Positions 31,251 through 52,870 of a DNA stretch of 64,000 nt are shown piece after piece. This stretch comes from Leucoraja erinacea. Its lineage: Eukaryota. The notes beneath the pieces are model-generated. The model did no database searches and had not been told where the DNA came from. It saw only the letters and a program-made list of their open reading frames with translations. The stretch's first letter is position 1; the number at the start of each line of letters is the position of its first letter. A program made the position numbers and the translations under genes. Where the stretch lies: NCBI RefSeq assembly GCF_028641065.1, contig NC_073402.1, positions 20,708,001 to 20,772,000 of the forward strand, given 5' to 3'.

Positions 31251-33682
31251 GAAGCCCCAGTGGACAGAGCTGCTGTTAATCAATTGAAAGGCAAGAGGGG
31301 TAATGCAGGCAAGGATGCAGCAGCAGTTAAAATACTGTTCAAGAGAGTTTTTTATTGTCATATGTCCCAGATAAAACAAAGACATTCTTATTTGCAGCAG
31401 CATAACATATAACAACGATGGCGGGTTGTGCAGTCTCAGTTCTGGTGAGTTCTGAGAAGAGGGCTGCTCAAAAACCTGTGCATGAATGAGTTTGAGGTGG
31501 AGAAGCTGTTGCACTGTAACAACCTCACCCTCTCGGCCGCAGAAGTCAGAGTCCAGTGATATGAAAAATCATCACGCTGGAGACTTCTTGGCTGCAGTGG
31601 ATGGTCATGTCGTCTTTAGTGCTCGGACTAGCCCTTCGTATTCCGCAGAGCGTTGCAGCATCGCCTTTCCAGCCGTTGGTTCATAAAGATCTCTTCCACA
31701 TGGTCCCCAAAGCAGACTTTCCATGAAGAATGAGCATGTCCAACAGGTTGAACTGGACTACATGGTACAAATTGCAAGGCCTTGACCTGACAGTATAAAT
31801 ATATACATATATATATATAATCAGTCTGAAGAAGGGTCTCGACTGAAAACCCATTCCTTCTCTCCAGAGATGCTGCCTGTCCGCTGAGTTATTCCAGTAT
31901 TATATGTCTATCTTCGATTTAAACCAGCATCTGCAGTTCTTTCCCACACATACATGTATGAATAATGAATAAATAAAAATGAATTAATAAAAATGTTATT
32001 GCCCAAGTATGAATACATACAAGGAATTTGCCTTGGTGCTTTGCTCGCAAAAGGATAAAAACACGACATACAGCAGACAATTAAAAATAAAACATTATAA
32101 TAAAAAAATGTGAAAATAAAGTACCAGAGAAAAAAAAGGCTACAGACTTTTGGCACATGTTTATAAGGATATACACACACATGTACATAAACACACACAC
32201 TGAACTTGTTTTCTCATTTATTATATTATTTACTGTTTACATATTCTGTTTAGCTGTTCAAGTAAGAATGTATTTGTTCTATCTAAACAGAATATATATA
32301 TACACTTATGGGTGTGTATATCTATAAAAACAAAAACAATTATAGTGTGAAACAATAATCAGGACAAACGGATTATGCTGAAGCCGTCAGGCAGCACTTG
32401 TGGGCTAGAGAACATAAGTAATGTTTTGGATGAGGATCCTTCAGACCAAAACACCAGAGGTGGCACCAGTTTCTCTGTAGCCCTTTGCTTTGCTTTTGGT
32501 CAAGTGATATTTTTCAGAGGGAACACAGTGAAATTAATTTTTATTTCCTTGCTTTGAGAATTTCTGAAATCTTTATTTAGGATTGTTTCCTTATTTATCT
32601 TTTGCTCACTTGTTTATCAAAATACAAGAACGTCAGACAACCAACATGGAACTACCATCTCACATTAACTTCAGCAATTGGATTGATCCTTCAGTCCATT
32701 CAATCTTGCAAATTCCCCCTCAAGGGCCTGGGGTTGGTATCTAAATTAGAAAAACTGTCCCACAAACTAGTCCATCAGCTGCCCAATAGTTCAACTCAAA
32801 TAATCATATCATATAAACAACACGTCGGTTCTATCACACAAGAGGTGGTGCAATCGTATAGATACAGGGTAACATGATCAAATAAACCTTATCATTGACT
32901 ATCTATCTATACGTGGAAGTTCACAACCCATTGTCAGAGTAAAATGCAACTTGTAAGCCCCTGACATGAGCATACACCGACCTATACGCATAGTCTGTGT
33001 GTACATGCACAATAAATTCTTACAATAAAAAGGTTTACTAAAATCGTACATAAATAATACTTACTATTCTCTACCAGATGAGGAATTAGCATTCTTCTAT
33101 ATCGAACAACATCTGGAAGCAGAGAAAAGCAATATCTCTCAGGCCAAATCTTCGGTTGACTATGCTATAATACCCGCTTCCTTGCCTCTAGCCCCTTTCC
33201 TATTCGAGATGCAGAAACATCAAATGCTTTTTTGCTAACTCAAAAGAGAGGGAAGATAACCGGTGCAAAAGAAGTGGTGAAACAAGAATGATTCGAGGGA
33301 ACTAGGGAATGTGAAAGACTAATTTACCATTAGATAATAGATCATTATTCTGTTGTATCTCCAATGTAGTTATTTAGAATTGTTGCATCATTGGAATAGT
33401 TCTTCAGCCTGATAATTTGGATTGTTAGAAAACTCAACGTATTACTAGAGCCATGTAATAAACAATTTCAGCCATTCAAATAAAAGTAAAAGTAGTTTTC
33501 ACCCAAACAAAATGTTAAACAAAAATTCAAAGTACGTTTTTAAATTAACCGATAGACAGAAAGAAAAGCAATAGTTTTCAAATAACAAATTTCACTCGGA
33601 GAGAACCAACAATCATTCACAGAAAACGAGCGAATGGAACAGCAATTTTCCCCCACGTGGATGGAAATGAAGCAATTATCAG

Positions 33683-33704
33683 CAAAGATCCTCTAGGATG
33701 TTTG
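33683..33704. mobile_element. 22-bp TIR-only transposon scar with 8-bp TSD
   Basis: ATTATCAG|CAAAGATCCTCTAGGATGTTTG|ATTATCAG; the ends match the TIRs of the 51445-52508 element. Confidence 0.85.
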
Positions 33705-33992
33705 ATTATCAGGAGTAACAGGAGAAAGAGAGTGGGGGGTCCCAATTTTCATCAATACCCCCCGCCGAGAGGGAAATACGACATTTTATGTGTAGGAAGG
33801 GATGTGTAACAACAGGTAGAGAGGAGGGATGATCCAGACGGTGCGCAAGTAGGTGGGGCGCTGGGAAGTCGCTCCGCTGCAGAGGGAGGGGGCGCTGCTT
33901 CGAGGAGGAAGCCTAGGCCTGTGCCAGAGTCTGTGTCCAGCGCCGGCCTCAGCTTCCAGGCCACCCCCGCCCCACGCCTGCCCGCCGCCCCT

Positions 33993-34148
33993 ATGCAGTA
34001 CGTGTCGCAGCAGAGTGCCATCTCCCAGCCCACTCAGGCCGTCCCCCCTCAGTTCGGCTACGTGATCCTAGTGTTCATTTACAGCTGGGTCATGCTAGCT
34101 TACCTGGGGGTCAAAGTGGGCATAGCTAGGAAGAAATACAACGTCAAG
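33993..34148 (+). CDS. mgst3b: Microsomal glutathione S-transferase 3b-like (MAPEG), exon 1 of 4 (joined CDS 453 nt, 150 aa)
   Basis: MQYVSQQ...PPQFGYVILVFIYSWVMLAYLGVKVGIARKKYNVK|gtaagg; resembles fish Mgst3b (FGYV..YSWVML.YLGVKVG.ARKKY). Confidence 0.88.
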
Positions 34149-35479
34149 GTAAGGAAGAAATAAATACCTTCCCGGAACAGTGAGTGCTGATTGAATGGGG
34201 TGACATTATTGATTCCCAAGGGCAGATTTTTTTTGCAACTTCTTTATCAAAGGTTCAAAGGTTATTTTATTGGTCACATACACCTAGGTGCAGTGAAATG
34301 CTTCTTGCCAAATGCTAAGGGTTTTCAGCCAACTCTTTAAACCAGCATCTGCAGTTCCATTTTATTACATTGTTTTTGTTGTCTTTTGGTACTGTTGTTC
34401 TCCATCCACTGTTATTCCACCAGGTTAAAATGTAAAGATCCTGTGTATTTTTCCCCCTAGATCTTAATTTCTAAAATGAGGGGGAGGCTTCCAAGTGGGA
34501 CAGGGCCCCAAACTCCAATTCCTCTAAGAAGGGTATTTTTCACAAAGCTAAAAGTTCATAATTATGAACATTGTGGCTGAAATCTATGTCAAAATCTTTT
34601 GAGGAAAAAAAAGTGGTGTTTAAATCTATTTAGCTAAAATGAACACCGAGTAAAATGTTAGTAAGTCCAAAATCTGTGTATTCAAATTCATTTCAGACCC
34701 ATTTTGTGGACTTTGGTTTTGCTTTACTCTGCTCCTGCTATTTTGTGGCCTAATTACATTTATATTTTCAAAAATTGTTTGTGAATATTTCAACTTATTA
34801 TTTGATTCAACATATTTGTTTTATGCATTTATTCCGCCAGTTACATTACAGTTATCCTGAGTTTTGAATACTCAACAGCAATATTGGGTTGTGTACGAAA
34901 TTCATGTTGAAAATGTAACCAATGAAGGCAATTCTGTCATGTTTACTTTAAGCAATCCATACATGCAAACTATTCTACAGTTTCCTTGCTTCTCTCTACT
35001 TCACTCTAAAATTAAACTAATTTTGTTACTTTCTTTGCTCTGCTGTCATTTTAAACATACTACTTGTCGGTTCTGCTAAATTTTTTTTTCCTGTTATTTT
35101 TGTTTAGCTTTCAATGAGATAAATGTTATTGTCATTAGTTTGCAAAATCTGGTCATTTTGGTTATTATTAATAATCTTCAAGCAAATATAAATGCTCCTG
35201 ATACCCATAATAAATTGCATCTTGATTGAGAATTACAAAAATAATACTCGTCTCACAGCTCCAGCATAAAATAAATAGAAAATGTTGGAACTACTTAGCA
35301 CATCAGGCTGCAGCTGTGGGAGGAGAAACAGACCCTTCATTAAACTTTATCTCTCACCACATTTGCTAGGTATTGATGAGCTGAGTGTTTCTGAATTTCT
35401 TTTGTTTTAGATTTTGAGCATCTGTAGTATTTTTCCACTGTACCAGCTAATCTTTATTTAAGGTCTTTAATAATACACA

Positions 35480-36120
35480 TAATGAAACACTTTATTGTCA
35501 TTTCAAACACATACAACAAAATTTCAGGGCTCTGCCCGAGCGGAGCTCCAACGTATCAAATAAATAATAACGACAATGGAAACAACAAAAACGGCATCCA
35601 AATGTGCAATATTTCACAGTATATTGTTGTAGCAGTACAAAATATTGGCTATGGGAGGGGTGTGTGTGTTCAGTTCAGAGTGGTGATGGCCTTGTGGTAG
35701 AAACTGTTTGTTAATCTTGTGCTGTGTGATTTGATGGACCTGTAACGCTTTCCTGAGGGCAGAAGGGCAAACGGGTGATGTGTGGGAAGAGATGAGTCCT
35801 CTAGTATGCGTGATGCCTTCTGCAGACAACAAGAGCTATAGATCTCTTCCAGGGTAGGCAGATGTGTGTTGGTGATCTTCTGGGCTATATTGATGACTCT
35901 CTGCAGAGCCGCCTGGTCAGCCACAGAACTGTTGCCATATCACGGTAGACAAAAGTGCTGGAGACACTCAGCGGGTGCAGCAGCATCTATGGAGCGAAGG
36001 AAATAGGCAATGTTTCATGCCGAAACCCTTCTTCAGACTGATGGAGGGTGGGGCGGGGGGCAGGGAGAAGAAAGGAAAAAGGAAGAGCAGGAGCGAAATC
36101 ATGTTGCCATACCACACCAG
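35480..36120 (-). mobile_element. Rex1-like LINE 3' fragment interrupted by a Penelope-derived repeat
   Basis: ORF 35670-35924 (ALQRVINIAQKI...LLPSGKRYRS). The insert at 35944-36101 is flanked by TGTTGCCATAtCAC / TGTTGCCATAcCAC. Confidence 0.75.
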
Positions 36121-36699
36121 GATCTGTTAATCTGTCAATTGGACCTGTTAATTTGTCAATTGACCTGTTATTCTGTTAATTGGACAGAATAACCAAAGTT
36201 TATTTCTTTTTAAGGCATTTGCGCATTATTGGTCTTCAGGAAACAAATAAAAGCAACATTATTTCCCTAATATTGCTGCCATTATGTTTCATAGTTTACA
36301 CTTAAGGCTGTAGTATTGCCAGCTAGTTTTGATATTGGATGCTGCACAAACTTTAGTTTAGTTTATTTATTGTCACGTGTACAAAAAATACAGTGAAAAG
36401 CTCTATCTTCATAGGAATTTTATTTTGTATGCTTGTGGGAAAGAATGTTACAATCATCGGGGTAGAATTTAAGCCATTGACTTGAAGAAAGCCACCTCCT
36501 CTTCCCTAACAATAATTTCAATGTGCCCTCAGCCGACCCTGAGGACCTAAATCTGATGAGACATGACTGAACATGTATGATTCTAAAGAACAAAAATATG
36601 CATGAATTAGCAACAGGAGTAAACCATTTCCCCTTCTAGCTTTCTCTGCCATTCATCAAGATCATGGCTGATGTTCTACCTCAACATTATCCTCGTGTC

Positions 36700-38045
36700 C
36701 CTTGATGCAAACTCCATCATCAAGTTTGCCGACGATACCACTGTTGTTGGACGAATCACAGATGGGGATGAGTCAGAGTATAGAAGGGAGATCAAACGAC
36801 TGACCAAATAGAGCCAGCACAACAACCTGGCTCTCACCATCAGTAAGACCAAGGAACTGATTGTAGACTTTGGTAGGGAAAGGAGGAGGACCCACAATCC
36901 TGTTCACATCAATGGGACGATGGTGGAGAGGGTCAATAACTTCAAATTCCCGGGCATGCATATTTCCGAAGATCATTCCTGGACCCGGCACACCGATGCA
37001 ATTATAAAGAAGGCATATCAGCGACTCTACTTCCTGAGAAGAATACGCAGATTCGGCATGTCGAAGAGGATTCTCTTAATCTTCTGCAGGTGCACGGTAG
37101 AGTGCATTCTGACTGGTTGCATCATGGCCTTGTTCGGCAACTTGAACGTCCAGGAGCGAAAAAGACTACAAAAAGTTGTGACCATTGCCCAGTCCATCAC
37201 CAGCTTTGACCTCCCCACCTTCGAAGGAATCTATCGTAGTGGCTGCTTCAAGAAGGCAGCCAAAATTATCAAGGACCCACACCATCCTGGCCAAGTCAAA
37301 TTTATTTGTCACATACACATACGAGATGTGCAGTGAAATGAAAGTGGCAATGCTCGCGGACTTTTGTGCAAAAGACAAACAACCAAACAAACTATAAACA
37401 CAATCATAACACACATATTCTTTTACATAATAAATAATGGAAGGAAAAACGTTCAGTAGAGTTAGTCCCTGGTGAGATATGCATTTACAGTCCGAATGGC
37501 CTCTGGGAAGAAACTCCTTCTCAACCTCTCCGTTCTCACCGCATGGCAACGGAGGCATTTGCCTGACCTTAGCAGCTGGAACAGTCCGTTGCAGGGGTGG
37601 AAGGGGTCTCTCATGATATTGTTGGCTCTGGAGTTGCACCTCCTGATGTATAGTTCCTGCAGGGTGGCAAGTGAAGTTCCCATTGTGCGTTCGGCCGAAC
37701 GCACTACTCTTTGCAGAGCCTTCTTGTCCTTGGCAGAGCAATGGCCACACACTCATCTCACCATTGCCATCAGGAAGAAGGTACAGGAGCCTGAAAACTG
37801 TAACATCCAGGTTCAGGAACAGCTTCTTCCCTGCAGCCATCAGGCTATTAAACACAACAACGATCTCTGAACTGCAAAAGATTATATTATTGCACTATAT
37901 TTGTTATTTATTTAACTTTTTCTTTTTTTTCTCTTTCCCCGTTATGTACTTTGTTTACATATTCACATATTCTGTTGTGCTGCAGCAAGCAAGAATTTAA
38001 TTGTCCCATCTGGGACACATGACAATAAAACACTCTTGACTTGAC
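36700..38045 (+). mobile_element. Rex1/Babar-clade LINE fragment containing a nested antisense Rex1 3' end (37294-37741)
   Basis: KFADDTTVVGRITDGDESEYRREI, KAYQRLYFLRR and LPSGRRYRS motifs; nested insert flanked by TGGCCA TSDs (37288-37293, 37742-37747); AATAAA and CTTGA tail at ~38025-38045. Confidence 0.88.
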
Positions 38046-38660
38046 GTCTTGATCCACGTCATGGCCAGAAATATACTGATCCCTGTTTTGAATTAACTCA
38101 AAAAATGAACTACTTCATTCATCCAAGGTAGACGATTGCAAAGGTTTACTGCTGTAAATGAAGAAATCTCTCCTCGCCTCAATCCCAAACTGTACCACTG
38201 ATCCCCTATTGCTCGGTGAGGGGAAACATCCTCTTTGCTTCGCACCTGTTAAAACCCTCTCGACCTGAAACATCACCCATTCCTTCTCTCCAGAGATACT
38301 GCTTGTCCCACTGAATTACTCTAGCTTTTTATGTCTATCTTCGGTTTAAACCAGCATTTGCAGTTCCTTACACAAAATCGTTAACAGTTTTTTTTTTATT
38401 TCAAATGACGTATCTAATGATTTATTGATTAATTCATTGTTGCCATTACATCACCAAACCCAACACTCTACTTTTTTCTGTTATTCTGCAATGTAATCCG
38501 ACATTATTTAAAGGCTTGAATCTGTTAATTTGAAATTGAATTTTTGTGGATTCATTTTCTATTGGCTGATGTTGAAAATGTGATTTTTAAAGCTGAGACA
38601 TGCACAAAAGGAACAGATCTGTTGTTTGTTTTGTGATAATATTTTTTATTTTGTTTCCAG

Positions 38661-38783
38661 TACCCAGACATGTACAGTGATAAAGAACCACTTTTCAACT
38701 GTATCCAACGGGCACATCAAAACACATTGGAGATATACCCTCAATGGCTGATCTTCCAACTGATAGCTGGAATTGTCTACCCG
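38661..38783 (+). CDS. mgst3b: MGST3b-like exon 2
   Basis: YPDMYSDKEPLFNCIQRAHQNTLEIYPQWL; FNCIQRAHQNTLE is the MGST3 signature. Confidence 0.95.
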
Positions 38784-39954
38784 GTAAGGAATGTTGCTCA
38801 GGAAAATATTCTGCCTTAAATAATCTGTCCTGTTGCATCCTGTTCCCCAGTCAATCACGTGATTGGTTCCACAGTCATGAAAGTAGGTTAATTCCTTCAG
38901 GTTTTTATCTAAAAGTCTGCAAAATTTAAATGTTTTTCATATGCAGCCTTGTTTCGAAAACAGGAAATGACATTTTAAAAATGCATACCCATACAAGTGT
39001 TTGTTACAATCCAGTAAAGGTGGGGAGGGGTGCCTGAAAGTCAAGAATTAAGTATGTTTTCACATAACCAATGATGCTAAATGTTTTCTGCTGTACTTAC
39101 CAATGAGATGACAATTGGTATTACTCAGCAGGAAAGAGAAAATGTATGCAATGCATAGTTGTAAGAGACATCTATGTGCTCCCTCAGTGTTACTAATGTC
39201 GAACCAAGCACTTCCTCAGTATTGTTCCCATATTAATCCTGGTGCTTTTCCAGTGCTGCCTCCATGTCATCCCATTTGCTCCCTCAGTGTTGCACCTATT
39301 TGTTCCAGGTACTGCCACGGCACTGTCCCGATATTAGCCAGGGACCTTCCTTGGCAATGTTTCAGTTTTGCACCAGGTGCTCCCTCTGAAGTGCCGGTTA
39401 CTGGAAAGTGCCATCTGGTGAAGTGCTGGTCAACTGAGCTCTTGCTGTTATTAGAATTAGAGTGGATTGTGGTAGAGAGTTCTTATTATCCGGTTGACAT
39501 TTCAGCTTGCATTTTAGTGCATTGTTATACCTAACTGTCCATCTTTGATCCATAGAGGGGATATTCCTGCATTTGTAAGTATTTTCCTTTGTAAAGAGTA
39601 AATTTTTTTATTTTTTTTAAATCTTGACATAAGTGGTCATGTTTAATTGTAACTGCCCCTTCCTATAGTGCAGATGGCACGCCAGCTTTTATGTTAACTA
39701 TTCTTTGGATAAAGAAGTTTCTCTTGAAATTTCCTATTCTGACTGATATTTATGGAAAAAATAGATTTTAAAGAAATTCTACTATATGTGACCATTTTAA
39801 TTACTTGGAAAATTTCAAAGTGTTTTACATTTTAAAGCACAGTAATTTTTCCTAAAATCAGCCACTGTCAATACAAGAATAGTTGGGAACGGCTGTCTTT
39901 TTTACATTTTCCACAATGAACATGGGATAATCTAGTTTGTTTAACATTTCACAG

Positions 39955-40027
39955 GTCACTGCTTCTTTGTTTGGTATAATTTGGGTAACCAGTCGATTTT
40001 CTTACGCATGGGGATATTACACAGGAG
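39955..40027 (+). CDS. mgst3b: MGST3b-like exon 3
   Basis: 73 nt, VTASLFGIIWVTSRFSYAWGYYTG, cag/gtaggt boundaries. Confidence 0.95.
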
Positions 40028-41004
40028 GTAGGTATTCAGTTAAGTTTTATACAAATATCTTGCCAGAAAAAGTGTTTATGTTCAATAAAGTTAAAAGTAC
40101 ATTACCTTAATGCCACCAGAAAGGAACGACACGTTTTTGCATCACAGGACTTACTTATCAAAGTTATATTGTTAGAGTATTATTCAAATTCATCAGAGTT
40201 TCCACAAGCAGCAATGCACAACTTTGGCTAATAGCAGATTTAGATAATAGCAGAGGATTTTTATTACCTATCAAAACCAATGGAACATGTTAACCAAATC
40301 TCTATGTAATATCTTGTACAAAGGATAGCACCTCCAGTTTAAAAAAAAAAATTTAAAAAAAATAGAAACCAAGATCTTGAAGGGGTGTTGGAATCTTGTA
40401 TCAAAGACAGACATTATCAACTAGACAAAAACTGACATTAATATATAAAACATCACAAAAAATAACAAGGGTTTTCTATCCAAAGTAATTATATTCCTGA
40501 AATAAAACTAATTGCCGGTGTATTTAGGTGTCAGTTATAACAATAATGAATTTGTTCGAACTTAAATATCATAAGAGGCTCAAGTCAAGATTCAGAGGCA
40601 CTAACACAAGAAAACTACATTTAATATGGGCTTTATGATTTATAAAACTAATTATATTTATCTCTGTAATATTACTCATCTCTACAGACCTCAAATCACA
40701 ACTTCTGGAACACTCTTAATTAATTAATGTTTTATTATTTTTAATGTTTAGTGTTTTCTGAATCGTTCGTAACTGTCACTGTCATGTTGTTAGAGCACCA
40801 AGGCAAATTCCTTGTATGTGAATACTTGGCCAATAAACTTGCTAACTTACTAACTCTTCTAAGCTTTTTTTTTTTAAAAAGGGTATTTGACATGCTTGCC
40901 TTCATCAGTCAGAGTATTGAGAATAGGAGTTGTAATGCTAGATTTGGTAAGGCCAGATTTGGAGTATTGTGTACCAGGACTGGAATGTATGAGTTATAAA
41001 GAAT

Positions 41005-41218
41005 GTAGGAAAGAACTGCAGATGCTGGTTTAAACTGAAGATAGACACAAAAAGCTAGAGTAACTCAGTGGGACAGGCTGTATCTCAGGAGAGAAGGAAT
41101 GGGTGACATTTCGGGTCGAGACACTTCAGACTGGTGAAGAAGGGTCTCGACCTGAAACGTCAACCATTCCTTCTCTACAGAGATGCTGCTTGTCCCGCTG
41201 AGTAACTCCAGCTTTTTG
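41005..41218. repeat. Inverted pair of Penelope-derived terminal repeats
   Basis: An antisense copy directly followed by a sense copy, forming an ~85-bp-arm palindrome centred near 41133; the same layout occurs at ~46412-46710, ~49441-49685 and ~58810-59066. Confidence 0.8.
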
Positions 41219-41407
41219 GAATTTCTTTTAGTTGTAAAGAGAGGTTTGGAAAGGCCAGGACATTTTCCCAGGTGCATAGGAGGTGGAGGGGTATATAAAA
41301 TCATGAAGGGCATAGATAAGGTGAATATTCACTCTTTTGCCCAAGATCGGGGGACCAAATTTAAAAGGCATAGATTTAAGGTGAGAGGTGAAAGATTTGA
41401 ATGGGAC

Positions 41408-41560: not shown

Positions 41561-43164
41561 TTGTTCAGACGAAGAGCACTGCCAGGTGAGCGGGCCGGCA
41601 GAAGGCGCTGAAGTGGCGGCCAGTTCTGCTGTCGGGTCCCGGAAGCCGCTCGCAGCTACCCGAGCTGCTTCTGTCCCCGGCTACAATGCAGCAGTGAGTG
41701 AGTTACTGGCATTATCCCCGACCCCCTCCTTCTCAACACTCCCCTCAATTGGTTCCTTGAACAAGTGTTGTCATTCAATAAGATGACAACTGATTCAACT
41801 TTTCCCTGTGCTCGTTTTTCCCACCATCTCTCCACCTGCCATCACCCACCCCCCCCCCCCCCCCCCCCCATTCAGTAATTCAGAATAATGGGGACTTGGA
41901 AGCCTTGGGCAAATTGAATTGTTACTGTCTTTATTTTTATTTATCTGTAGGGCGAGAACAATCTGCGCATGCGCGGTTTCAGTTTTTTTTAAAAAGCCGA
42001 CTGCCTACCCTGAGTAATCACTCATGGCACGTGCCTGAAGTGAATCGTATGTATGTGGCGTGTCCTCAACACTTAACTAACAAATTGCTGATTCTACTTG
42101 TCCAAAGTCAATATATTATGAAATGTTGTGCACAGAACCTGGGTCTAACCAAAGGTAGTTAATTACAACAGTGATACAATCCTGCGTTCTTCACTCTCCA
42201 CCATCACTACTAACATAAGGCAACAAGATGTTAATTCCACCATGTATTTTCAAGATTGATTTCAGATTTGATGCATTTGTATTCATTGTTTGCTTGTCTC
42301 ATTTTTGTTTGTGGGGTGTTCCCCCGTCTTTACATTTAGATAATCCCATCTTCATATCATGAAGTGAATAATTTGATATCAGACTCGGGTCACTTCAGTT
42401 TTTTATCTCCAGGAAATGTACCTTTCTGATTATTTCCCTTTTCCAGAATCCAAATGTCTTTTTTTTTGTGTCTTCTCTTCTAAAACTGTTTATAATTACA
42501 CTGCTTGTGTATTTTCAGCATTTTTACTTTTGTAGTTATTTCATTTAGTTCAGAGATACAGCACGGAAACAGGCCCTTTGGCCACCGAGTCCATACTGAC
42601 AAGCAATCCCTGCACACTAACGCTATCCTACTCGCACTAGGGACAATTTACAATTATACCAAGCCAATTAACATACAAACCTGTAGTGTGTGTGGGAGGA
42701 AACTGTAGAAAACCCACCCAAGGGGAGAACGTACAAACTCCATACAGACGAGCACTCTTGGTCAGGATCTAGCCCAGGTCTCTGCCGGTGTGCCACCTTG
42801 CCACCATATTTGATTAACCTAGTTATCATTGGTTCTCTTCTAGTCTTATTTACTTAATAGTTATCATTATCGTTCTAGCTTGCTTTGCTGTGTTTCCTAA
42901 ACATGTGTCAGACTTTTCTGTCATCTGATAAATTCCCCATGCATTGGTCAATATGTTGCTTCCAAACTGTAATCTAGGGAATTTGCTCATGCACAGGTTA
43001 CAAACACTGTCTATATAAATATATAAATAAATAAACAATATTTAAATAAATCGGATACTTTATAATAACTGAAATTTATGTTTTAAAAATATTAGCAGTA
43101 TCAAATAAAATTATATTGAGTGTGTTAAATGATTGTTCACCTGTGTTATTTGCTTTATCTTCAG

Positions 43165-43265
43165 TGCCAGAGAAAAGAAAGATTGGGTCCTATGGATACA
43201 TTGGATTTCTGGGAGTCATAGCCCTGTCTTTAATCGTTGCTTTTAAAACCATTTTCTCACCGTGA
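43165..43265 (+). CDS. mgst3b: MGST3b-like exon 4 (terminal)
   Basis: VPEKRKIGSYGYIGFLGVIALSLIVAFKTIFSP*; AATAAA candidates at ~43296, ~43492 and ~44131. Confidence 0.92.
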
Positions 43266-44299
43266 TAAGCTTTCTACCACTGAAAGTTGGGGAAAATAAA
43301 AATACCGGTTATCCAGTGGTATTTATCAGCTGTTATACATGGCCAGCCATTTTGAAATGAATGTCATCTTAGAAATCCTGCTACTTGTTTATCGATGCTC
43401 ATTTAAATATTACCAACCTGTGATCTTCTCCGATTTGTTAAGTGTTCCAGTTTGACTAGTTTTGTGGCATAAATCTATTTTTTCTATATTTAATAAAATG
43501 GTATCCTGGACTACAATGTTAATTTACAAATTTTATTTTTTATAATTAGGCAAATGACTGGCTTCTGCCTGAACTTGAATTGCTTTCTATTCTAGCTTGT
43601 GTATGTAATTGTTAGTTTAAAGTGAATATGTATTATTGAACTAGGTTTAACATTTTATTTTTCAGGATGCTTAGTAACTCAACTTACTTAAATTTTGATC
43701 CAAGGCCCTCTGTTTTGTATTACGGTTTAAACTTAAAATCAACCTAATCACACAGAGAATGGTGTATGTGTGCAGAACATGTGAAAGAAAACTAAGTGAT
43801 ATCAAAGCCAATAGAAACTTTAAAAGCTTGTTAAACAAGGCTGTAATTCTTTATCAATGGATGTTCTGACATTGAGAACTGAATGTTCACTGATTTGTAC
43901 ATTACCTGTTGGTTTTATTTTAAAGAAACATATTTTCTGCACCATTTAGTTATCCATTTTAATCTTTATTCAGCATACCAAATAATGAAATGGCTTGAAC
44001 TATAATTTTGTCTTAAATGTTATGTATTTTGTTGTAACCATTCATCAGGATCCAACTATAGTTGATGATTTCCTCAAATGCTTTTCTTTATGTACAAATC
44101 TTTATGGCTCTGTTTCACGCTTAATTTCTAAATAAAAAGATCAATTTTAAATATAGTTTATTTTTGTTGAAAGTGTTTTTGGTACAAAATAGCAAGAAAG
44201 TTGATTGTAAAATATTTAAATGGACAGAAACAATCCATCCAATTTGCATTGCAGAAGCAACAAACGGTATACACATCGGAGTGGAATGAGACATCAGAT

Positions 44300-44930
44300 A
44301 AAACCCCGACAGTCCTTTCAGGTTAGGCAGAGGTTCACTTGCACCTCATCCAACCTCATCTACTGTATCCGTTGTTCAAGATGTGGACTATTATACATCG
44401 GCGAGACCAAACGCAGACTCGGCAATCCTTTCGCGGAACACCTTCACTTGGCCTGCGTGAACCAACCTGATCTCCTGGTTGCTGGACACTTTAATTCTCC
44501 TTCTCATTCCTACACAGACCTTTCTGTCCTCAGTCTCCTCCATTGTCAGAGTGAGGCTAAACGCAAATTGGAGGAACAGCATCTCATATTTCGCTGGGCA
44601 ACTTACAGCCAAATATTGAAACCTCTCACTTCAGGTAGCCCCGGCATTCCCCCCCTCTCTTTCTACTACCCCCCCCCCCCCCCCCCCCCCCCCCTAGTCT
44701 CACTAGCTTCTCATTGTCACCCTAGAGTATACAATGGCCTGTTTCCTTTATCTTTCTTAATTTTTTGCAAGTTTTTCAATATTCTTTATCTCTCCACATC
44801 GCTGACTATATCTCTCGTTTTCCTTATCCCAGCCAGTCTGAAGAAGGGTCTTGACACGAAACATCACCCATTCCCTCTCTAGAGATGCTGCCTGTCCCGC
44901 TGAGTTACTCCATCTTTGTGTCTATCGTAG
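44300..44930 (+). mobile_element. Penelope-like element 3' fragment: GIY-YIG endonuclease plus hammerhead-bearing terminal repeat
   Basis: FTCTSSNLIYCIRCSRCGLLYIGETKRRL...EHL...HFNSPSH...KLEEQHLIFR, then CTGAAGA-stem-GAAACATC at 44838-44865. Confidence 0.9.
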
Positions 44931-47657
44931 GTAAAATTATTCACTGATTATACTGAATCAGTGTAACAAATGCCCTTTCTGATAGGTAAATAGCAATATG
45001 GTGGCTAGCAACACTGGTTTTAAAATGTGTAAAAGAACAGAAGTGCTGGAGTAACTTGGCAGGTCAGGTAGCATCTCTGGAGAACCAGGATTGGAGATGT
45101 TTTGGGGCTAGACCCTTCCTCAGATAGGTCTGAAATGCGTACTATCTTTAAATCATTTTTTAAAGTTATTTTCCACGATAGTACTGTTTCATACCCATGC
45201 CTCCATAAGTTCAGCCAGTTTATCTTCATAATGCAAGTCACAATCCCAATCTCCTATTGACAATATACAATAAAGTGATGGGAATGTTACAAATTTCCGA
45301 AAGTAGTTGAAAATAGAATCCCTTGCGTAACTGCTAACAACAATGGAAATATCTTTGCTGCAACAGACACGATCCATCTTAACACCACATAGCCAAATAG
45401 TCCAAGACAAAGTAAAGGATAGGTAGCCCAAAGTATAGAAAATGTACTTGCAAGTGATAACATTTAGAAAGAAATGAACATTTGAATAGAAAACATTTGT
45501 GCCTAGGATGGGTTTTAAAAAATTGCCACCAGCATAAAATGTTAAATCTCCCCTTCTCAATCACTGCCTCTGGTACTATTCCAATTCTTGCAGTCAGGAA
45601 ACAAGCAGCATTTTTTGCAATTACGTTATTTTTCTGTTGCAACAAAACATTTAGTTTATATACCTGCTCAACTTTTCATTCTGCTTTATTTGTGTATTGA
45701 TAGTAAACAATTGGTTAGTCATCAAACAATTGATTAAATGAAAGGGTATATTTAAGTCAATAGCACCAAGAGGAATCATTAGGGTTAGGCTTTGAGGGAA
45801 GAGTACATAATTTTGTGTAACTGAGCTTCATGACTTGATATTGTTAGATGATGCTACTGTTGAAGTGAACTATGTAAAATGAGAATAGTGTGCATTACAA
45901 TTCCCAAACAATGTTTGTACCTTGCTAACTATCTCAGTGAAGTGACACAGTACAGAATTTAATGACCGTTCACTATGGAAGTTCATTATGAATAGTTAAG
46001 GTGAATTGAAAAATATGTAGCTTAAGATTCATTACATTTAAATGATTCATGAAGACAACTTTTAAACATTTTTCATCTTGAGATGCTGACCACATTAATG
46101 CTTCACATAAACTGGAAATGCAACTTCAAACCATACTAAGGTTCCAGAAATAGTTGGTTATAGACTGGCAAACCAATATTCTGATTTCCTAAAACCGCTG
46201 CTCATTTTCTATTAAATATTAAAGTAACACAAACAAGTGACTAAGGATATTAATCTTAAAGCCTTCATTACACCAAAAAAACATTATTTGTGGCCTCCTG
46301 TACATCAGTGATACCAAGCATAGACTCAGCTCACTTGCGCTCAATCATCCAAGACCTACTGGATCTCCTGGTTGCTGACCATTTTAACTCTACTTCCCAT
46401 ACTGACCTGGGCTAGACACCAAAAGCTGGAGTAACTTAGCGGGACAGGCAGCATCTCTGGAGAGAAGGAATGGGCGATGTTTCGGGTCGAGAAATTCTTC
46501 AGAGAAACATCACTCATTTTGCGTCTGCCGCACTTTGTACTGCCTCTCATCTCGGCTTTCTCCCCGCACACCCCACAATTAGTCTGAAGAAGCGTCCCAA
46601 CCTAAAACGCGACCTGCCCATATTCTCAGAAGATGCTGCTTGACCCAATGAGTTACTCCAGCACTTTGTGCCCTTATGTGTATACCAGCTACTGCAGTTC
46701 CTGGTTTCTACTTTTAAATTGCTGGCTATGACTGACAAGCAAAGAATTACACTGTGCCTTGTTACATGTGACAATAAAGTATTCCACAACTCCATGTACA
46801 ACCATTGATAGTTGACCAAGAAGTGCTGGAGGATTATGATCCATCGTAAAAGCACTGATTATCATTCCCACAATCTCATCAGTTGTCATTAGGGACTGTA
46901 TTCAGAGCTGCTGTAGTAGGGGCAGAAATTTGCCGTGAGACGTTAACCAGAGTGCAAAATAGCTGCCAAAAGAAGACCAGGTCAACCAAAGTATGTTTAT
47001 TAAAAACTAAAAAATTCAATATTTCCGCTATTTAAAGATGGCAAAACAAAGTATAACTAATTATTGTGTTTTAATAACAGTGCACTTTCAAGTAAAGGTT
47101 TCCACCAGTTGATTTATCTGCTTAAAAGACAAATATAGAAGAACACAAGAACCGGATATACATGTTAAATCAGTATTTGGACAAACACCTTTAATCAAAT
47201 GGGTCAACCACTTTCTGTGGACTTTAGAGGTCTTCCATTTTGTTGATAAAAGTTAGACCTTCAAAAGAACAAGGATTTTCAACCATCCATCTTTATTTTC
47301 CGGCCAAAAAGTGTGGCATCGTAAGACCGAAAAATAATGGGCAATTAGAAACTATGTCTTTTGTCCGTCAAATATATTTGGGGAAGAAAAAAATAATAAT
47401 CGTACAACCAGAAAAATATCACGTAAGCCGTTTCTTGCAAAACCAAGTCCGGTGTGGTAAGTAAATCTGAATTGGGCATTACAATTCAGATTGGCAGCTG
47501 CGAAATCCGCTCACATTAACCTGGTTTAACAATGAAGGAGACAGGCATCGGGCAGCTGCAACTGGTAGAAAAACTGGTCTTGAAACGGCGGCGGTATCGG
47601 GCGGGGGGGTAGGAAACGTTGCTCCGGGTAATGTCCCTCTTGCAGCCCGCCCTCGCT

Positions 47658-48143
47658 TTATCTGGCCGCGCGTAGTAATCCAGGTCTGGAAGGCACCATC
47701 ATGGGCCGGTGAGGCCCCATCATCGGGCCCGGCATCATGGGCACCGGGCCACCCATGGGCGGTCTCATCCCCGGGCCCACCAACATCATACCGGGCGGAG
47801 CGTGGCCCATCATCGGCATCATGGGCGGCCCTCCCATCGGCGGCCCGGGTAGGATGGCGGGGCGAGGCGGCGGCACCCCCACGTTGCCGGGAGGCGGCGG
47901 GATGGCAGCTCCACCCGGGGGCGGCCCGGTCGGCGTGGAGAATGGCGCGGTGGGCGGGATCTTGCCCTGGCGGAAGGCGGCCGTCGTCTTATCGATCAGG
48001 CTCTGGGCCTGCTCCTCCATCCATTTCTGGTAGTAGTCCTTGACGTTCTCCTTGTGCTTGCGGCCCTCGCAGTGCGTCTTGCGGACGGACGGCGAGTCGT
48101 GGGTGAGGTAGGTGTCGCAGTAGTCGCAGTAATACTTGGGCAT
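47658..48143 (-). CDS. snrpc: U1 snRNP C protein (U1-C), intact single-exon retrogene, 161 aa
   Basis: [57 protein letters not shown] (U1-C zinc finger) plus a Pro/Met/Gly tail; no introns or disablements; minus-strand AATAAA at 47001-46996. Confidence 0.93.
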
Positions 48144-48324
48144 CTTGTCAGCTGCTGCTCCTCCGCCGCTGCCGCCGGGTCCCGCTGCTAATCTTTGTTG
48201 CTGTCGCTGCTGCTGCTGCTGCTGGCGTCCCTCAGACACCAGTCATGTGATCCCCGCACACGAGCATGCGCACAACCCGCACCCTCAGGCACACAATGGG
48301 CCAAAGATGGCTGCAGATGCTGTA

Positions 48325-49015
48325 ATTCAATTCAACTTTATTGTCATTGCACAAATACGAGTACAGGTACAAATTCAGATTCAATTTTAATTGTCATTGT
48401 CAGTGTACAGTACAGAGACAACGAAATGCAGTTTAGCGTCTGGTCATAGTGCAAGATAGTAGAAATAAAAATACAAATAAAAATAAAAATATGGTTAACA
48501 ATGTGTGGACTGTGGATGAATTAAACTGGTACATAGGCAATAAATGTACACAAATGTATACGGAGAGTCTAAAGATAGCTAGCGACGGGACTCTGAGTTC
48601 AGCAATGTAATTGTGTTATTGAAAAAGCTGTTCCTCAGCCTGCTTGTGCGATACCTGAGGCTCCTGTACCGCCTCCCTGATGGGAGGAGGGCAAATAGTC
48701 CATGGTTAGGGTGAGGGGTCCTTGATAATTTTCCCGGCCCGTCTCAGACACCGTTTTCGGTGGAGGGCATCCATGGCAGGGAGCGGGGCACCGATGATGT
48801 GCTGAGCGGTTTTCACCACCCGTTGCAGTGCCTTCCTGTCAGCTGTGGTGCAGCTGCTGTGCCATACCGTGAAGCAGGTGGTCAGGATGCTTTCGATGGT
48901 ACAGCAGTAGAAGTTGGACAGGATCTGGGGGGACAGGTGAGCTTTCTTAAGCCTCCTCAGAAAGTAAAGGCGCTGCTGCGCCTTTTTGATCAGTTTGGTG
49001 GTATTGAGGGACCAG
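48325..49015 (-). mobile_element. Rex1-like LINE 3' fragment
   Basis: Antisense KKAQQRLYF.RRLKK and LPSGRRYR-like segments, with a short-repeat tail at ~48325-48390. Confidence 0.7.
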
Positions 49016-49323
49016 TAAGTAAGTACGTTTTATTTATATAGCACGTTTTAAGTCAACTCGCATTGACACCAAAGTGCTTTACATAAAATAGATAATACGT
49101 TTCCATACAAACCATAGAAAAAGGTTAAAAAAAATGAAGAAAATGGACACAACACATTAAAGAGTTCAACACAAACATCCCCCCACAGCAGAATCAAAAG
49201 ATTCCACTGTGGGGAAAGGCACCAGAAAGTTAAGTCCTCTTCCTCTGTGAAACACCCGAGGTCGGGGCCCATTTGAGGCCTTGCAGCCAGTCCGATAATT
49301 TTCAGGGCCCTCTTGCTGTGGAC

Positions 49324-49347
49324 CAAAGATTCGCTCTATGATCTTTG
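49324..49347. mobile_element. 24-bp TIR-only transposon scar with 8-bp TSD
   Basis: CTGTGGAC|CAAAGAT+TCGCTCTATGATCTTTG|CTGTGGGC: 7 nt of the left TIR, 17 nt of the right TIR, TSD 7/8. Confidence 0.8.
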
Positions 49348-49493
49348 CTGTGGGCATTTCTGTTTCTGTTTCTGCTTGCTACCGCACAACCGCCAACAGC
49401 TGGACTTACCCCTCTGACAAATGAGATATCTCCCCACGATGGACACAAAAAGCTGGAGTAACTCAGCCGACCAGGCATCGTCTCTGGAGAAAA

Positions 49494-49540
49494 GGAATAG
49501 GTGACGTTTCGGGTCGAGACCCTTCTTCAGACCTATTTCC
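49494..49540 (-). ncRNA. Minimal type I hammerhead ribozyme (Penelope-type), complete core with helix I
   Basis: Minus strand AAUAGGU-CUGAAGA-A-GGGU(CUCG)ACCC-GAAA-C-GUC-ACCUAUU: conserved core, helix II, palindromic ACGU helix III and a 7-bp helix I. Confidence 0.7.
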
Positions 49541-50795
49541 CTTTCCCCGGACTCTTAATTTGAAGAAGGGCTCGACACGGAACGTCATCCAATCCTTCCC
49601 TCCAGAGATACCGCGTTTTCCCGTTGAGTTACTCCAGCTTTTTGTGTCTACGGTATAAACCAGCGTCCGCAGTTCTTTCCTACACAAATCGTAAGTGATA
49701 GGAGAGAATGAGGCCATTCGGCACATTAAGTTTACTCTGCCATTCAATCAATCATCTCTCTCCCTCTCTCTCTTAACCCCATAGCCTCTGACACCCATAC
49801 TGATCAAGAATCAATCTATCACTGCCTGAAAAATATCCACTGACTTGGCCTCCACAGCCTTCTGTGGCAATAAATTCCAGATTCACCACCTTCGGACTAA
49901 AGGTATGAAAAGGCACATCGAACAAGTGAATGAAAATAAGACAGATCCAAGCCAGCAACGATGATCAAGGAATGGTGGAGCCCACAATGGTCCATTGTTG
50001 GCTGTGGAAAAGATGATACCTCCTGACGAGTAATAACGAGAACCATTCCTTCTCTAGAGATGCTGCCTGTCCCAACTGAGTTACTCCAGCATTTTGTGTA
50101 TATTCTCAATGATGCTTTATAATGACATGTATCTAAGTACAGTGAAATTCTTTGTTTTTGCATACAATCCGGTAAATTCATACAGCAGACCTCACCTAAG
50201 AGTTACACAAGTTGCCACGTTTCTGGCACTGGCAAACCTCTTTGTACATTCATATGCTGGAATGACACAAAATACTGGAATAACTCAGCAGGACAGGCAG
50301 CATCTTTGGAGAGAAGGAATGGGTAACATTTCGAGTCAAGACCCTTCCCCTCCCGTTGAGTTACACCAGCATTTTGTGTCTATCTTCAGTGTAAACCAGC
50401 ATCTGTAGTTCTGCATCTGCAGACAAAAAAAATATTCAGAATTTTTTAAACTGCAAAACAAAAACTGCACAAAAACACTTCATACATTCTTAGTGGTATA
50501 CACTACTGTTGTGCTCAGCTGTGTTCACAGCTATCTTTACACAAAACAACTTTGCAACTTGTGGTAGTTTTTGTATCACTGGCTTACAGGGCGCAGTTTT
50601 TTGTCATTTCAAATATAAATGTTATTCAAAATAAAGAAATATATACAAAATTAAGCAGTGAAAAAACGTATGCCTATATATTCAATAGTGTAGCCATCAC
50701 AGCAGTTTACTTTACTTTTTTTACTTCTAAAAATTGATTTTATTTGGAATAAAAAATATTCACAAAAAAAATCATGCAAAAGATTATCATAGAAA

Positions 50796-51098
50796 GGGCA
50801 ACACAGTGGCACTGCAGTAGCGTTTTTGCCCAACAGTGCCAGACACCCGGGTTCGATCCTGACTACGGCTGCTGACTGTACGGAATTTGCACGTTCTCCC
50901 TGTGACCACGTGTGTTTTCAACAGGTGCTCTGGTTTCCTTCGACTCTCCACAGACAAACTGGTTTGCAGGTTAATTGGCTTTGGAAAGTTGTAAGAATTG
51001 TCCCTGTGTGTTGGATAGTGCAAGTGTACGGTGTAATCAGCAGTCCATGCGGACTTGATGGGCTGAAGGCCCTGGAATCCATGCTGTATGTATCTCTA
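50796..51098 (+). mobile_element. tRNA-derived SINE (V-SINE/HE1-like)
   Basis: A-box-like 5' end, B-box GGTTCGATCC at 50850-50859, core GGAATTTGCACGTTCTCCC, CR1-like 3' end. Confidence 0.8.
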
Positions 51099-51444
51099 AG
51101 AAGGCTCAGAAGGCTGTGGAGGCCAAGTCAGTGGATATACTTAAGGCAGAGATAGATAGGTTCTTGATTAGTACAGTTGTCAGAGGTTATGGGGGGGGGA
51201 AGGCAGGAGAATGGGGTTAGGATGGAGAGAGATTAGCCATGATTGAATTGCGATGCAGATTTGATGGGGCCGAATGGCTCCTACCACATGATCTTATGAA
51301 GTCTAAAGGTTCTTAGTATCTATACATTCAAAAGTGTCATATTCAGTAGTGTTCGTACCAATCTTTAAACAAAACATCTGGATCACTGGGACGATAACCC
51401 TCCCCTTTGAGGAAGTAGCACTTGGTGTTTCGCTCCCTGGTTAC

Positions 51445-52508
51445 CAAAGATCTTATAGCGGAGCAAGATAGGCTACTCCTGCTAAATGCAATGGACTGAC
51501 GTGTAGTACGCTATGGAGGGGGATCATGGGCATTTTCCACGCCCATTTTAGCAACCTGAGCCTACCTAACCCGACCCGACTCGCACTGTAATCAATGTTG
51601 CGGGGCAACAGTTTGTGTGGGTCAGATTCATAAATCTGTCAGTTCAAACTTCTTGTCAAGAATAAAATTTGATTCTGGTAATTGTCTTTTTTAATGTTTT
51701 TTAAATCATTTCTTTTTAAATGGCTCACAAGCAGTGTTTGAGTTGATTTTGTAGTAACCGGAACCGACCGACTCGCAGGGTGATTGACAGGGGGGACTTT
51801 TTGTGCGTGATTATAGGGTTAGATTCGTAATTCAATTAGTTCATAATTCTGTTGATTCTTGTTAAGGAATAAAATGTTTATAAACACACATACATGAAAA
51901 TTATATAAATGTATATAACACACACAATTATATTTCTTCTAAACCAATAATGAACTTTATTTCAGACTAGACAAGGGACATTAAATAAGAAACATTGTAA
52001 ATAAGAAACATTGTCTTGGGGCACTCTCTCTCCCCGCTGCCCCGGGCCCCGCACTCCTTCTCCCCGCTGCCCCGGGCCCCGCACTCCTTCTCCCCGCTGC
52101 CCCGGGCCCCGCACTCCTTCTCCCCGCTCTCTCTCCGCTGCCCCGGACCCCGCACTCCTTCTCCCCCGCTGCCCCGCACTCTCTCTCCCCGCTGCCCCGG
52201 GCCCCGCACTCTCTCTCCCCGCACTCCTTCTCCCCGCTGCCCCGGGCCCCGCACTCCTTCTCCCCGCTGCCCCGGGCCTTGCACTCCTTCTCCCCGCTGC
52301 CCCGGGCCTTGCACTCCTTCTCCACGCTGCGGATCCAATCTTTGGCCGGAAGCAAGAAGGCGGGAGCAAGAAAGCGGTGCAAGATGGCGGAACAAGATGG
52401 CGGAGTCTGCTTGCTAAAATGTGTCCTGTAATCACCCATGAAACCGCCCATGAGCGTACCTCACGTTTGCGTGAGAGTAACCTATCTTGCTTCGCTCTAA
52501 GATCTTTG
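51445..52508. mobile_element. Non-autonomous TIR DNA transposon, 1064 bp (probable P superfamily)
   Basis: 34-bp TIRs (51445-51478 and 52475-52508, 31/34 identical, CAAAG...CTTTG), perfect 8-bp TSD CTGGTTAC (51437-51444, 52509-52516), no transposase ORF. Confidence 0.9.
52019..52330. repeat. GC-rich ~30-bp minisatellite inside the TIR element
   Basis: About 10 units of GCACTCCTTCTCCCCGCTGCCCCGGGCCCC with partial units; source of the repetitive ORFs at 51962-52601. Confidence 0.95.
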
Positions 52509-52519
52509 CTGGTTACTGT

Positions 52520-52555
52520 CAAAGATCCTAGAGGAGCGCTCCTCTATAATCTTTG
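52520..52555. mobile_element. 36-bp TIR-only transposon scar with 8-bp TSD
   Basis: GTTACTGT|CAAAGATCCTAGAGGAGCGCTCCTCTATAATCTTTG|GTTACTGT; 18+18 palindrome (16/18). Confidence 0.88.
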
Positions 52556-52599
52556 GTTACTGTGTCCAGAGACAATAATCCCTCCCCCCTCCCCCCTTT

Positions 52600-52870
52600 A
52601 GAAAGGATGGCATCACGTGAGGAGGTGAAGTGAGGTGGGCGTGGTTAGACGCATGCGCACTGCCCCCCCCGGCGGTGGGGCGAACAATGACTGGCGTTTT
52701 AATGAAAGGATTACATCATCACGTACGCCGTCACTAATCACGTGACGTCCGGGCGGACTGGCATGCGCAAAGATCCTATAGCGAAGGATCTTTGGGCATG
52801 CGCAGTGGGTCTTTGCTGGGACAAAGATCGTCTATTGTTTGTGGTGGGGACTGTGCGCGGCCGAGTGAGT
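52600..52870 (+). promoter_or_regulatory. tmem50a CpG-island promoter and non-coding exon 1
   Basis: NRF1-like CGCATGCGCA (~52650) and GCATGCGCA (52761, 52796), E-box/CRE TCACGTGACGT (~52738), GC boxes, donor GA|GTGAGT at 52865. Confidence 0.7.
52768..52794. mobile_element. 27-bp TIR-only transposon scar with 8-bp TSD
   Basis: GGCATGCG|CAAAGATCCTATAGCGA+AGGATCTTTG|GGCATGCG: 17 nt of the left TIR plus 10 nt of the right TIR. Confidence 0.88.

What the first reader, a model, noticed from the sequence alone, without database searches (positions are those of the whole stretch)
33675..52849. P-element-like transposon family leaving excision footprints at gene promoters
Seen: one full 1064-bp element (51445-52508; 34-bp TIRs CAAAG...CTTTG; 8-bp TSD) and four tiny scars built only from its TIR tips, each between its own 8-bp direct repeat. 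These are 33683-33704 (~11+11 nt), 49324-49347 (7+17), 52520-52555 (18+18) and 52768-52794 (17+10). A more decayed fifth candidate lies at 52822-52841 (TSD 6/8). No scar keeps more than ~17-18 nt of either end, and their junctions all differ. Established: Drosophila P transposase makes 8-bp TSDs and cuts with a 17-nt stagger, so end-joining repair leaves up to ~17 bp of each TIR between both TSD copies. P elements also favour promoters. hAT elements have 8-bp TSDs too, but excise through flank hairpins and do not leave TIR tips. Inference: a P/THAP9-type transposase was active in the germline of this lineage, inserted near housekeeping promoters (mgst3b, snrpc retrogene, tmem50a) and left fixed footprints. 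Such a footprint record in a vertebrate genome would be unusual.
Basis: partly seen in the sequence, partly recalled or inferred. Interest (0 to 1): 0.92.

Follow-up and report, generated by a model that had tools for sequence, protein, structure and literature searches.

The report
Transposon excision scars near gene promoters
One full copy and five tiny leftovers of a cut-and-paste transposon sit beside gene starts, and the leftovers have the shape that P-element-type cutting leaves behind, which I could not find described for any vertebrate.

Summary
The window has one 1064-bp non-coding element (51445-52508; 34-bp inverted ends, 31 of 34 matching; perfect 8-bp target duplication). It also has four 22-36 bp stubs made only of that element's end tips, each between its own 8-bp direct repeat, plus a decayed fifth. 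Decoy tips give 0.55 such structures against 5 found. A family-blind scan finds only this family.

Nothing lies between 37 and 1063 bp. Every stub parses with at most 17 end letters per side (7+17, 17+10, 17+2+17) and 0-2 letters of junction overlap. Published Drosophila P-element donor repair products have this form (PMC2895639). hAT footprints hold no end letters (PMC3499496).

A related organism's contig lacks the element, stub 3 and stub 4 at the same locus, so these are lineage-specific insertions.

Most likely (about 0.6) these are end-joined donor sites of a P-type transposon.

Promoter proximity is clear for the MAPEG and TMEM50 genes and weak for the U1-C retrogene.

First readers of this scan noted the same stubs in other windows of this genome; those notes are unchecked.

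The parts
51445..52508 (.). Full 1064-bp non-autonomous element
   Evidence: Inverted ends 51445-51478 and 52475-52508 match 31/34. No open frame of transposase type in six frames. The family is abundant in four organisms (tables 2 and 3).
51437..51444 (.). Left target-site duplication of the 1064-bp element (CTGGTTAC); right copy at 52509-52516
   Evidence: 8/8.
52021..52330 (.). 30-bp tandem array inside the element; a 13-bp subterminal array lies at 52351-52405
33683..33704 (.). Stub 1, 22 bp (8-10 + 12-14 end letters, 2-nt overlap); target copies 33675-33682 and 33705-33712 (ATTATCAG)
   Evidence: It ends 289 bp upstream of the predicted MAPEG start codon at 33993.
49324..49347 (.). Stub 2, 24 bp (7+17, 1-nt overlap); target copies 49316-49323 and 49348-49355 (7/8)
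   Evidence: It lies 1181 bp upstream of the U1-C ORF start at 48143, in repeated DNA.
52520..52555 (.). Stub 3, 36 bp (18+18 or 17+2+17); target copies 52512-52519 and 52556-52563 (GTTACTGT), overlapping the element's right target copy by 5 bp
   Evidence: Absent from organism B's contig (record 11).
52768..52794 (.). Stub 4, 27 bp (17+10, 2-nt overlap); target copies 52760-52767 and 52795-52802 (GGCATGCG)
   Evidence: Present in organisms A and C, absent in B (records 8, 22, 11).
52822..52841 (.). Stub 5, 20 bp, decayed; target copies 52814-52821 and 52842-52849 (6/8)
   Evidence: decoy mean 0.027. Present in organisms A and C.
52551..53150 (+). CpG-island-like stretch holding stubs 4 and 5 and abutting stub 3 and the element; presumed promoter of the UPF0220/TMEM50 gene
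   Evidence: GC 0.55, CpG o/e 0.85. Coding exons at 57350-57505 and 59573-59725. That this island is the gene's promoter is inference; the start codon is 4.6 kb downstream.

Best explanation
A DNA transposon family with 8-bp target duplications and roughly 31-34 bp inverted ends inserted repeatedly in this lineage, often beside CpG-rich gene starts. At five places the element was later cut out by a transposase that cleaves the non-transferred strand about 17 nt inside each end, as Drosophila P transposase does. Each flank therefore kept a 3' tail of up to 17 end letters. End joining trimmed the two tails by different amounts and joined them with 0-2 nt of overlap or a couple of filler letters. 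Both target copies stayed in place. The result is a 20-36 bp near-palindrome between 8-bp direct repeats.

Shown: the structures, their non-random nature, the gap in sizes, the at-most-17 parse, and lineage-specific presence.
Inferred: that excision (not deletion) made them, that the stagger is about 17 nt, and that the enzyme is P/THAP9-type.
For: 1. Five target-duplication-flanked structures against 0.55 expected. Only this family appears in a family-blind scan.
2. The scan covered 14-3000 bp and found sizes 22, 24, 27, 36 and 1064 only. All 8 arms of the four solid stubs are 19 nt or shorter, and three stubs have one arm of exactly 17 under the simplest parse.
3. Junctions all differ, with overlaps of 2, 1, 0 and 2 nt.
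4. Published Drosophila P donor junctions have the same form, with both 8-bp target copies kept and up to 17 end letters per side (PMC2895639, passages). The 17-nt stagger and promoter preference are stated in PMC7776569 (passages).
5. hAT footprints are small changes to the flank and hold no end letters (PMC3499496, passages).
6. The 34-bp ends are in the 27-32 bp range quoted for P elements (PMC3698922) and above the 10-25 bp quoted for hAT (PMC3942097).
7. Organism B's single-copy contig lacks the element, stub 3 and stub 4. Organism C has stubs 4 and 5.
8. Unchecked earlier notes of this scan report P-type THAP transposons and similar stubs elsewhere in this genome.
Against: - No transposase was linked to these ends.
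- The sample is 4-5 stubs. Under other parses, arms reach 18 (stubs 2 and 3) or 19 (stub 4), so the ceiling is 17-19, not a clean 17.
- Stub 3's arms depart from the 1064-bp copy's end after letter 14, so its parse assumes a variant source end or filler.
- T at position 2 and A at position 7 of the target copy (3 of 5; background 0.088) fit the Drosophila P consensus (PMC2577343). As I recall, they also fit Ac-type hAT elements, and the first five end letters fit the recalled hAT end consensus.
- No site was seen in both the filled and the scarred state, so excision itself is not witnessed.
- In organism B the element site holds 14 unexplained letters, and the stub 4 site is 4 bp shorter than a clean empty site.
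Confidence: 0.6

Rival explanations
1. The family belongs to another 8-bp-duplicating superfamily (hAT, Zisupton, Novosib or a MULE). The stubs arise either from an unknown long-stagger cleavage in that superfamily, or from gap repair copied from the sister chromatid that aborts very early on both sides and is then end-joined.
For: - The 8-bp target duplication is shared with hAT (PMC3942097).
- The first five end letters and T2/A7 in 3 of 5 target copies fit what I recall of hAT (for the count).
- Incomplete synthesis followed by end joining is a documented outcome of gap repair in flies (PMC2895639).
- No transposase was linked to the ends here.
Against: - hAT excision leaves no end letters (PMC3499496).
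- Aborted gap repair should give a broad spread of retained lengths, yet 0 of 6 structures lie between 37 and 1063 bp.
- 34-bp ends exceed the 10-25 bp quoted for hAT.
- T2/A7 is equally part of the Drosophila P target consensus.
Confidence: 0.2
2. The stubs are themselves mobile micro-elements (20-40 bp 'micro-MITEs') that a transposase moves as units. Each target duplication then marks the arrival of a stub, not of a full element.
For: - Each stub has both tips and its own 8-bp duplication.
- Two earlier first-reader notes read them as palindromic insertions or a micro-transposon (unchecked).
- They cluster at promoters.
Against: - Five of 5 stubs differ in length and junction. A mobile unit should recur.
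- The two arms are unequal in three stubs (7+17, 17+10, 8-10+12-14), which is expected of trimming and not of a replicated unit.
- The stubs lack the subterminal region that is conserved between the two ends of the long copy out to about 110-140 bp.
Confidence: 0.12
3. Full elements were inserted and later lost their interior by spontaneous deletion (hairpin or cruciform processing, or replication slippage between the inverted arms), with no transposase involved.
For: - The long inverted ends (34 bp, gapped to about 110-140 bp) could form hairpins.
- Junction overlaps of 0-2 nt are also seen in slippage or illegitimate recombination.
Against: - Deletion end points have no reason to fall within 19 nt of both tips in 8 of 8 arms. 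If end points were uniform over each 532-bp half, my own arithmetic gives a chance of about 4e-12.
- No intermediate-size derivative is present in the window.
Confidence: 0.08

Closest known systems
Drosophila melanogaster P element: end-joined donor sites after excision
   Same: 8-bp target duplication kept on both sides. Up to 17 letters of each inverted end retained. Short overlaps or a few filler letters at the joint (PMC2895639; PMC7776569). Ends of about 31 bp. Insertions favour promoters. Repeated hits at one site.
   Different: The end sequence is unrelated. The host is a vertebrate. These are fixed genomic features rather than laboratory products. The transposase is not identified. 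The ceiling may be 17-19 rather than exactly 17.
Zebrafish Pdre2 / zfTHAP9 (vertebrate P-type element)
   Same: A vertebrate host and an 8-bp target duplication. The excision-competent transposase cuts like a P enzyme (PMC10983969, passages).
   Different: Pdre2 has 13-bp ends plus 12-bp subterminal repeats and about 50 copies. In its excision assays the donor flanks suffered larger deletions. No genomic stubs are reported in the passages I read.
BuT5, the MITE of a divergent Drosophila P element
   Same: An element of about 1 kb with no coding capacity that is moved in trans by a P transposase, with similarity to the master only at the ends (PMC3698922).
   Different: BuT5 has 3-bp ends plus 16-17 bp sub-ends and 8-9 bp duplications. 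'Footprint' occurs 0 times in that paper's text.
hAT elements (Ac, Tol2, TcBuster)
   Same: 8-bp target duplication. The end's first letters and the T2/A7 target bias resemble hAT (recalled).
   Different: hAT ends are 10-25 bp. Excision goes through flank hairpins and leaves small flank changes with no end letters.

Membership tests
P superfamily (P element / THAP9 type) | 8-bp (7-9) target-site duplication | tested here: met
   Four of 6 structures are 8/8, one is 7/8 and one is 6/8.
P superfamily (P element / THAP9 type) | Inverted ends of roughly 27-32 bp in canonical members (variable in others) | tested here: met
   34 bp, 31/34 matching. The range is quoted in PMC3698922. Not exclusive to P.
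P superfamily (P element / THAP9 type) | Autonomous copies encode a THAP domain plus a split RNase H transposase with a GTP-binding insertion | not testable with these tools
Metagenome scans gave 0 hits and 2 chance hits.
P superfamily (P element / THAP9 type) | Cleavage staggered by about 17 nt, so donor sites keep up to 17 letters of each end | tested here: met
   All arms are 19 nt or shorter. The parses 7+17, 17+10 and 17+2+17 are possible. No sizes between 37 and 1063 bp occur. The sample is small (4-5), and this is indirect evidence for the cut.
P superfamily (P element / THAP9 type) | Palindromic 14-bp target motif as in Drosophila (PMC2577343) | tested here: inconclusive
   Matches of the five sites to the 14-letter consensus were 5, 4, 9, 4 and 5 (background mean 4.1). 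T2/A7 was present in 3 of 5. The motif of a distant family need not be the same.
hAT superfamily | 8-bp target duplication and short ends (10-25 bp) | tested here: inconclusive
   The duplication is met. The ends are longer, at 34 bp.
hAT superfamily | Excision through flank hairpins, leaving footprints without end letters | tested here: not met
   Every stub is built of end letters. The hAT footprint type comes from PMC3499496.
MITE / mobile micro-element | Many near-identical copies of one unit | tested here: not met
   Within the window, 5 of 5 stubs differ in length and junction. Genome-wide copy counts were not testable.

The most novel reading that the evidence does not exclude
Skates and their relatives carry an abundant P-type transposon family that was recently active. 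Its germline excisions were repaired by end joining and became fixed, so the genome holds a natural archive of donor-site scars. That archive would show that the unusual roughly 17-nt staggered cut of the fly P transposase is conserved in a vertebrate lineage. It would also show that each scar adds a duplicated 8-bp site plus a small palindrome to core promoters; at stub 4 the duplicated target copy lies in the presumed TMEM50 promoter.
Probability: 0.5. Interest if true: 0.8.

Novelty: new member of a known kind. Interest (0 to 1): 0.66.

Why it matters
P-type transposition chemistry (a 17-nt stagger and a GTP cofactor) is known almost only from the fly enzyme. In vertebrates, only the zebrafish and human THAP9 proteins have been tested, and only partly.

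A genome with many fixed donor-site scars would let the cleavage stagger, the repair pathway and the target preference of a vertebrate P-type family be read straight from sequence. It would also point to a candidate active or recently active transposase.

The scars change core promoters by 28-44 bp each, so they are also a source of regulatory variation between closely related species.

I found no paper describing such scars in a vertebrate. The little skate genome paper's main text has 0 mentions of P element, hAT, MITE or THAP. Its repeat library and supplements were not seen and may already hold the family under some name.

Tried and rejected
Chance was rejected by the decoy-tip and Markov controls.

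More copies in the window: blastn of the element against the window found only the stubs. A scan with a 20-letter end pattern found no solo ends.

THAP or transposase remnant in the 1064-bp copy: none in six frames. None stood out among the 104 open frames of 90 aa or more in the window, read by eye without a domain search.

Target-site letters as a test between P and hAT were dropped, because the Drosophila P consensus itself has T2/A7.

Copies in other collections: two metagenome pattern scans gave 0 hits and then 2 hits. The 2 hits show no further end similarity and match my own estimate of the number expected by chance for 20 fixed letters.

Earlier notes of the scan: eight look-ups gave parallel first-reader notes but no link between these ends and a THAP gene. 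The look-up by sequence was blank.

Rfam scan of 49000-53200 at E of 0.1 or less: only a weak lncRNA match, and no hammerhead.

They were searched exon by exon.

Supplements of papers were not asked for.
Full report
WHAT IS THERE. Reading the sequence and a scripted scan confirm one 1064-bp element at 51445-52508. Its ends are inverted (34 bp, 31 of 34 matching) and it sits between perfect copies of CTGGTTAC. Four short inserts are built only from the tips of those ends, each between its own 8-bp direct repeat:
- 33683-33704: 22 bp.
- 49324-49347: 24 bp, repeat 7/8.
- 52520-52555: 36 bp.
- 52768-52794: 27 bp.

195 decoy tips of the same composition averaged 0.55 hits, and 2 of the 195 reached 5.

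A scan that knows nothing of the family looked for any perfect 8-bp repeat around a 14-60 bp insert with inverted 7-nt tips. It found three inserts, all of this family. Twenty Markov-1 shuffles gave four hits in all.

Under the loose rule that admits it, 150 decoys averaged 0.027 hits.

No further copy or solo end is in the window.

The long copy carries a 30-bp tandem array and a 13-bp subterminal array. It has no transposase-like frame, so it is a non-autonomous copy.

ANATOMY OF THE STUBS. Junction overlap makes the arm lengths ambiguous by up to 2 nt:
- Stub 1: 8-10 + 12-14.
- Stub 2: 6-7 + 17-18.
- Stub 3: 18 + 18.
- Stub 4: 17-19 + 8-10.

Overlaps at the joints are 2, 1, 0 and 2 nt, and no two stubs are alike.

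Most arms carry C at end position 9 where the 1064-bp copy has T. Stub 3's two arms share a variant after position 14. The stubs therefore come from other members of the family, not from this copy.

No structure lies between 37 and 1063 bp. If deletion end points were uniform over each half of the element, eight arms of 19 nt or fewer would have a chance near 4e-12. That figure is my own arithmetic, not a tool result.

Twenty runs from eight studies and four coded organisms hold part of 49200-52900. I laid one run of each organism at 85% likeness. All four runs are contigs, and only a small part of the pieces is listed.
- Organism B (run X12): one 807-nt contig at single-copy depth (30.9) lies on 51241-51446, then has 10 letters that fit nothing. 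It then lies on 52554-52757 and runs straight on to 52797-52900. B therefore lacks the 1064-bp element, the 36-bp stub 3, and stub 4 with one target copy.
- Against a simple reading of B: 14 letters stand where a clean empty site would have none, and the skip at stub 4 is 39 bp, not 35.
- Organism C (run X15): a contig covers 52584-52900 with 7 differences and 1 gap, so C has stubs 4 and 5.
- Organism A (run X1): identical there.
- No listed contig bridges stub 2 or the element's ends in A, C or D. Stub 1 was outside the stretch.
- The element's body draws summed contig depths of 1e5-9e5 against about 15-45 for the unique last bin, and dozens of contigs per position in all four organisms.
- There are organism-specific majority letters. 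At 51552, for example, the variant takes all the depth in B but about 1% in A.

The family is therefore abundant, and it diversified after these organisms split.

SURROUNDINGS.
- MAPEG exons on the + strand at 38640-38816 (E 1.5e-7) and 39931-40107 (E 2.4e-4, below the curated cut-off). The first-exon frame had no hit. By reading it, I place a start codon at 33993, 289 bp after stub 1.
- UPF0220 (TMEM50 family) exons on the + strand at 57350-57505 (E 7.6e-4, below the cut-off) and 59573-59725 (E 1.1e-7).
- A U1 zinc-finger ORF on the - strand (E 6e-23).

Stubs 4 and 5 lie inside the CpG-island-like stretch 52551-53150, and stub 3 and the element lie just before it. That this stretch is the TMEM50 promoter is inference, since the start codon is 4.6 kb away.

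Stub 2 is 1181 bp upstream of the U1-C start codon, within DNA that is itself highly repeated (table 2). I would not call that a promoter hit.

With three independent loci, the promoter preference is suggestive only.

The element and stub 3 used target sites that overlap by 5 bp. Either order of events fits.

COMPARISON WITH WHAT IS KNOWN.
- P transposase cuts the 3' strand at the element's tip and the other strand 17 nt inside the 31-bp end. Insertions make 8-bp duplications and favour promoters (PMC7776569, passages; PMC10983969, passages).
- After excision the flanks carry 17-nt non-complementary 3' tails. Sequenced end-joining products read: target copy, up to 17 end letters, 0-15 inserted letters, up to 17 end letters, target copy (PMC2895639, passages including its junction table). 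That is the anatomy seen here.
- hAT excision goes through hairpins on the flanks and leaves small insertions or deletions without end letters (PMC3499496, passages). hAT ends are quoted as 10-25 bp (PMC3942097, passages).
- The first letters of the end, and T at position 2 with A at position 7 of the target copy (3 of 5 here; background 0.088), made me consider hAT, from recall. But the Drosophila P target consensus has the same two letters in its central 8 (PMC2577343, passages), so this does not separate the two.

WHAT IS NOT SHOWN. I could not tie these ends to any transposase. Earlier notes of this scan report the following for the same genome:
- P-type THAP transposons; one follow-up calls the genome little skate.
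- The same kind of stubs in other windows, with lengths given as 9-42, 17-36, 22-38 and 25-35 bp.

These notes are unchecked leads. None links these particular ends to a THAP gene. The identity of the organism rests on those notes alone.

LITERATURE. Five full-text searches listed no paper on P-type excision scars in a vertebrate genome. The little skate genome paper, found, mentions none of P element, hAT, MITE or THAP in its main text. Its repeat library and supplements were not seen.

VERDICT. The best reading is end-joined donor sites of a P-type family (confidence about 0.6). The main rival is another 8-bp-duplicating superfamily (0.2). Next come mobile micro-elements (0.12) and spontaneous internal deletion (0.08).

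It is a new member of a known kind: known chemistry, seen as fixed scars in a vertebrate, and apparently undescribed. The same thing has already been noted by this scan's first readers on other DNA of this genome.

Noticed in passing
An Rfam scan of 49000-53200 at E of 0.1 or less gave no hammerhead. The place lies in the most repeated bin of the stretch (summed depth about 1e7 in all four organisms, with many contigs ending at 49531-49532). It is therefore part of a very abundant repeat.
   Followed up: partly
window 49448-51307: Most of this stretch is made of highly repeated elements shared by four organisms. There are recurrent joints (for example 49532 to 50076, and 50098 to 50389) and A-rich or T-rich loose ends, which suggests nested SINE/LINE-type insertions.
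   Followed up: no
window 51569-51812: The 1064-bp element holds an internal duplication of about 190 bp. Some family copies in other contigs skip 51620-51811 (joint 51619 to 51812 in three of four runs).
   Followed up: no
window 52351-52405: A 13-bp unit is repeated about 4 times just inside the right end of the element. It is absent from the left end. It could be a protein-binding array of the element or a captured promoter piece.
   Followed up: no
window 47661-48143 (- strand): An intronless U1-C (zf-U1, E 6e-23) open frame of 161 aa lies inside a 900-bp CpG island. This agrees with the earlier retrogene note.
   Followed up: partly
window 601-2861, 36812-37333, 54226-54729, 63259-63999: Long open frames that look like reverse-transcriptase or LINE-type remnants, judged by eye from the translations. 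No domain search was run.
   Followed up: no
window 52760-52802: The target copy duplicated by stub 4 (GGCATGCG) overlaps a GC-rich palindromic motif that also occurs near 52650. I confirmed only the duplication.
   Followed up: partly
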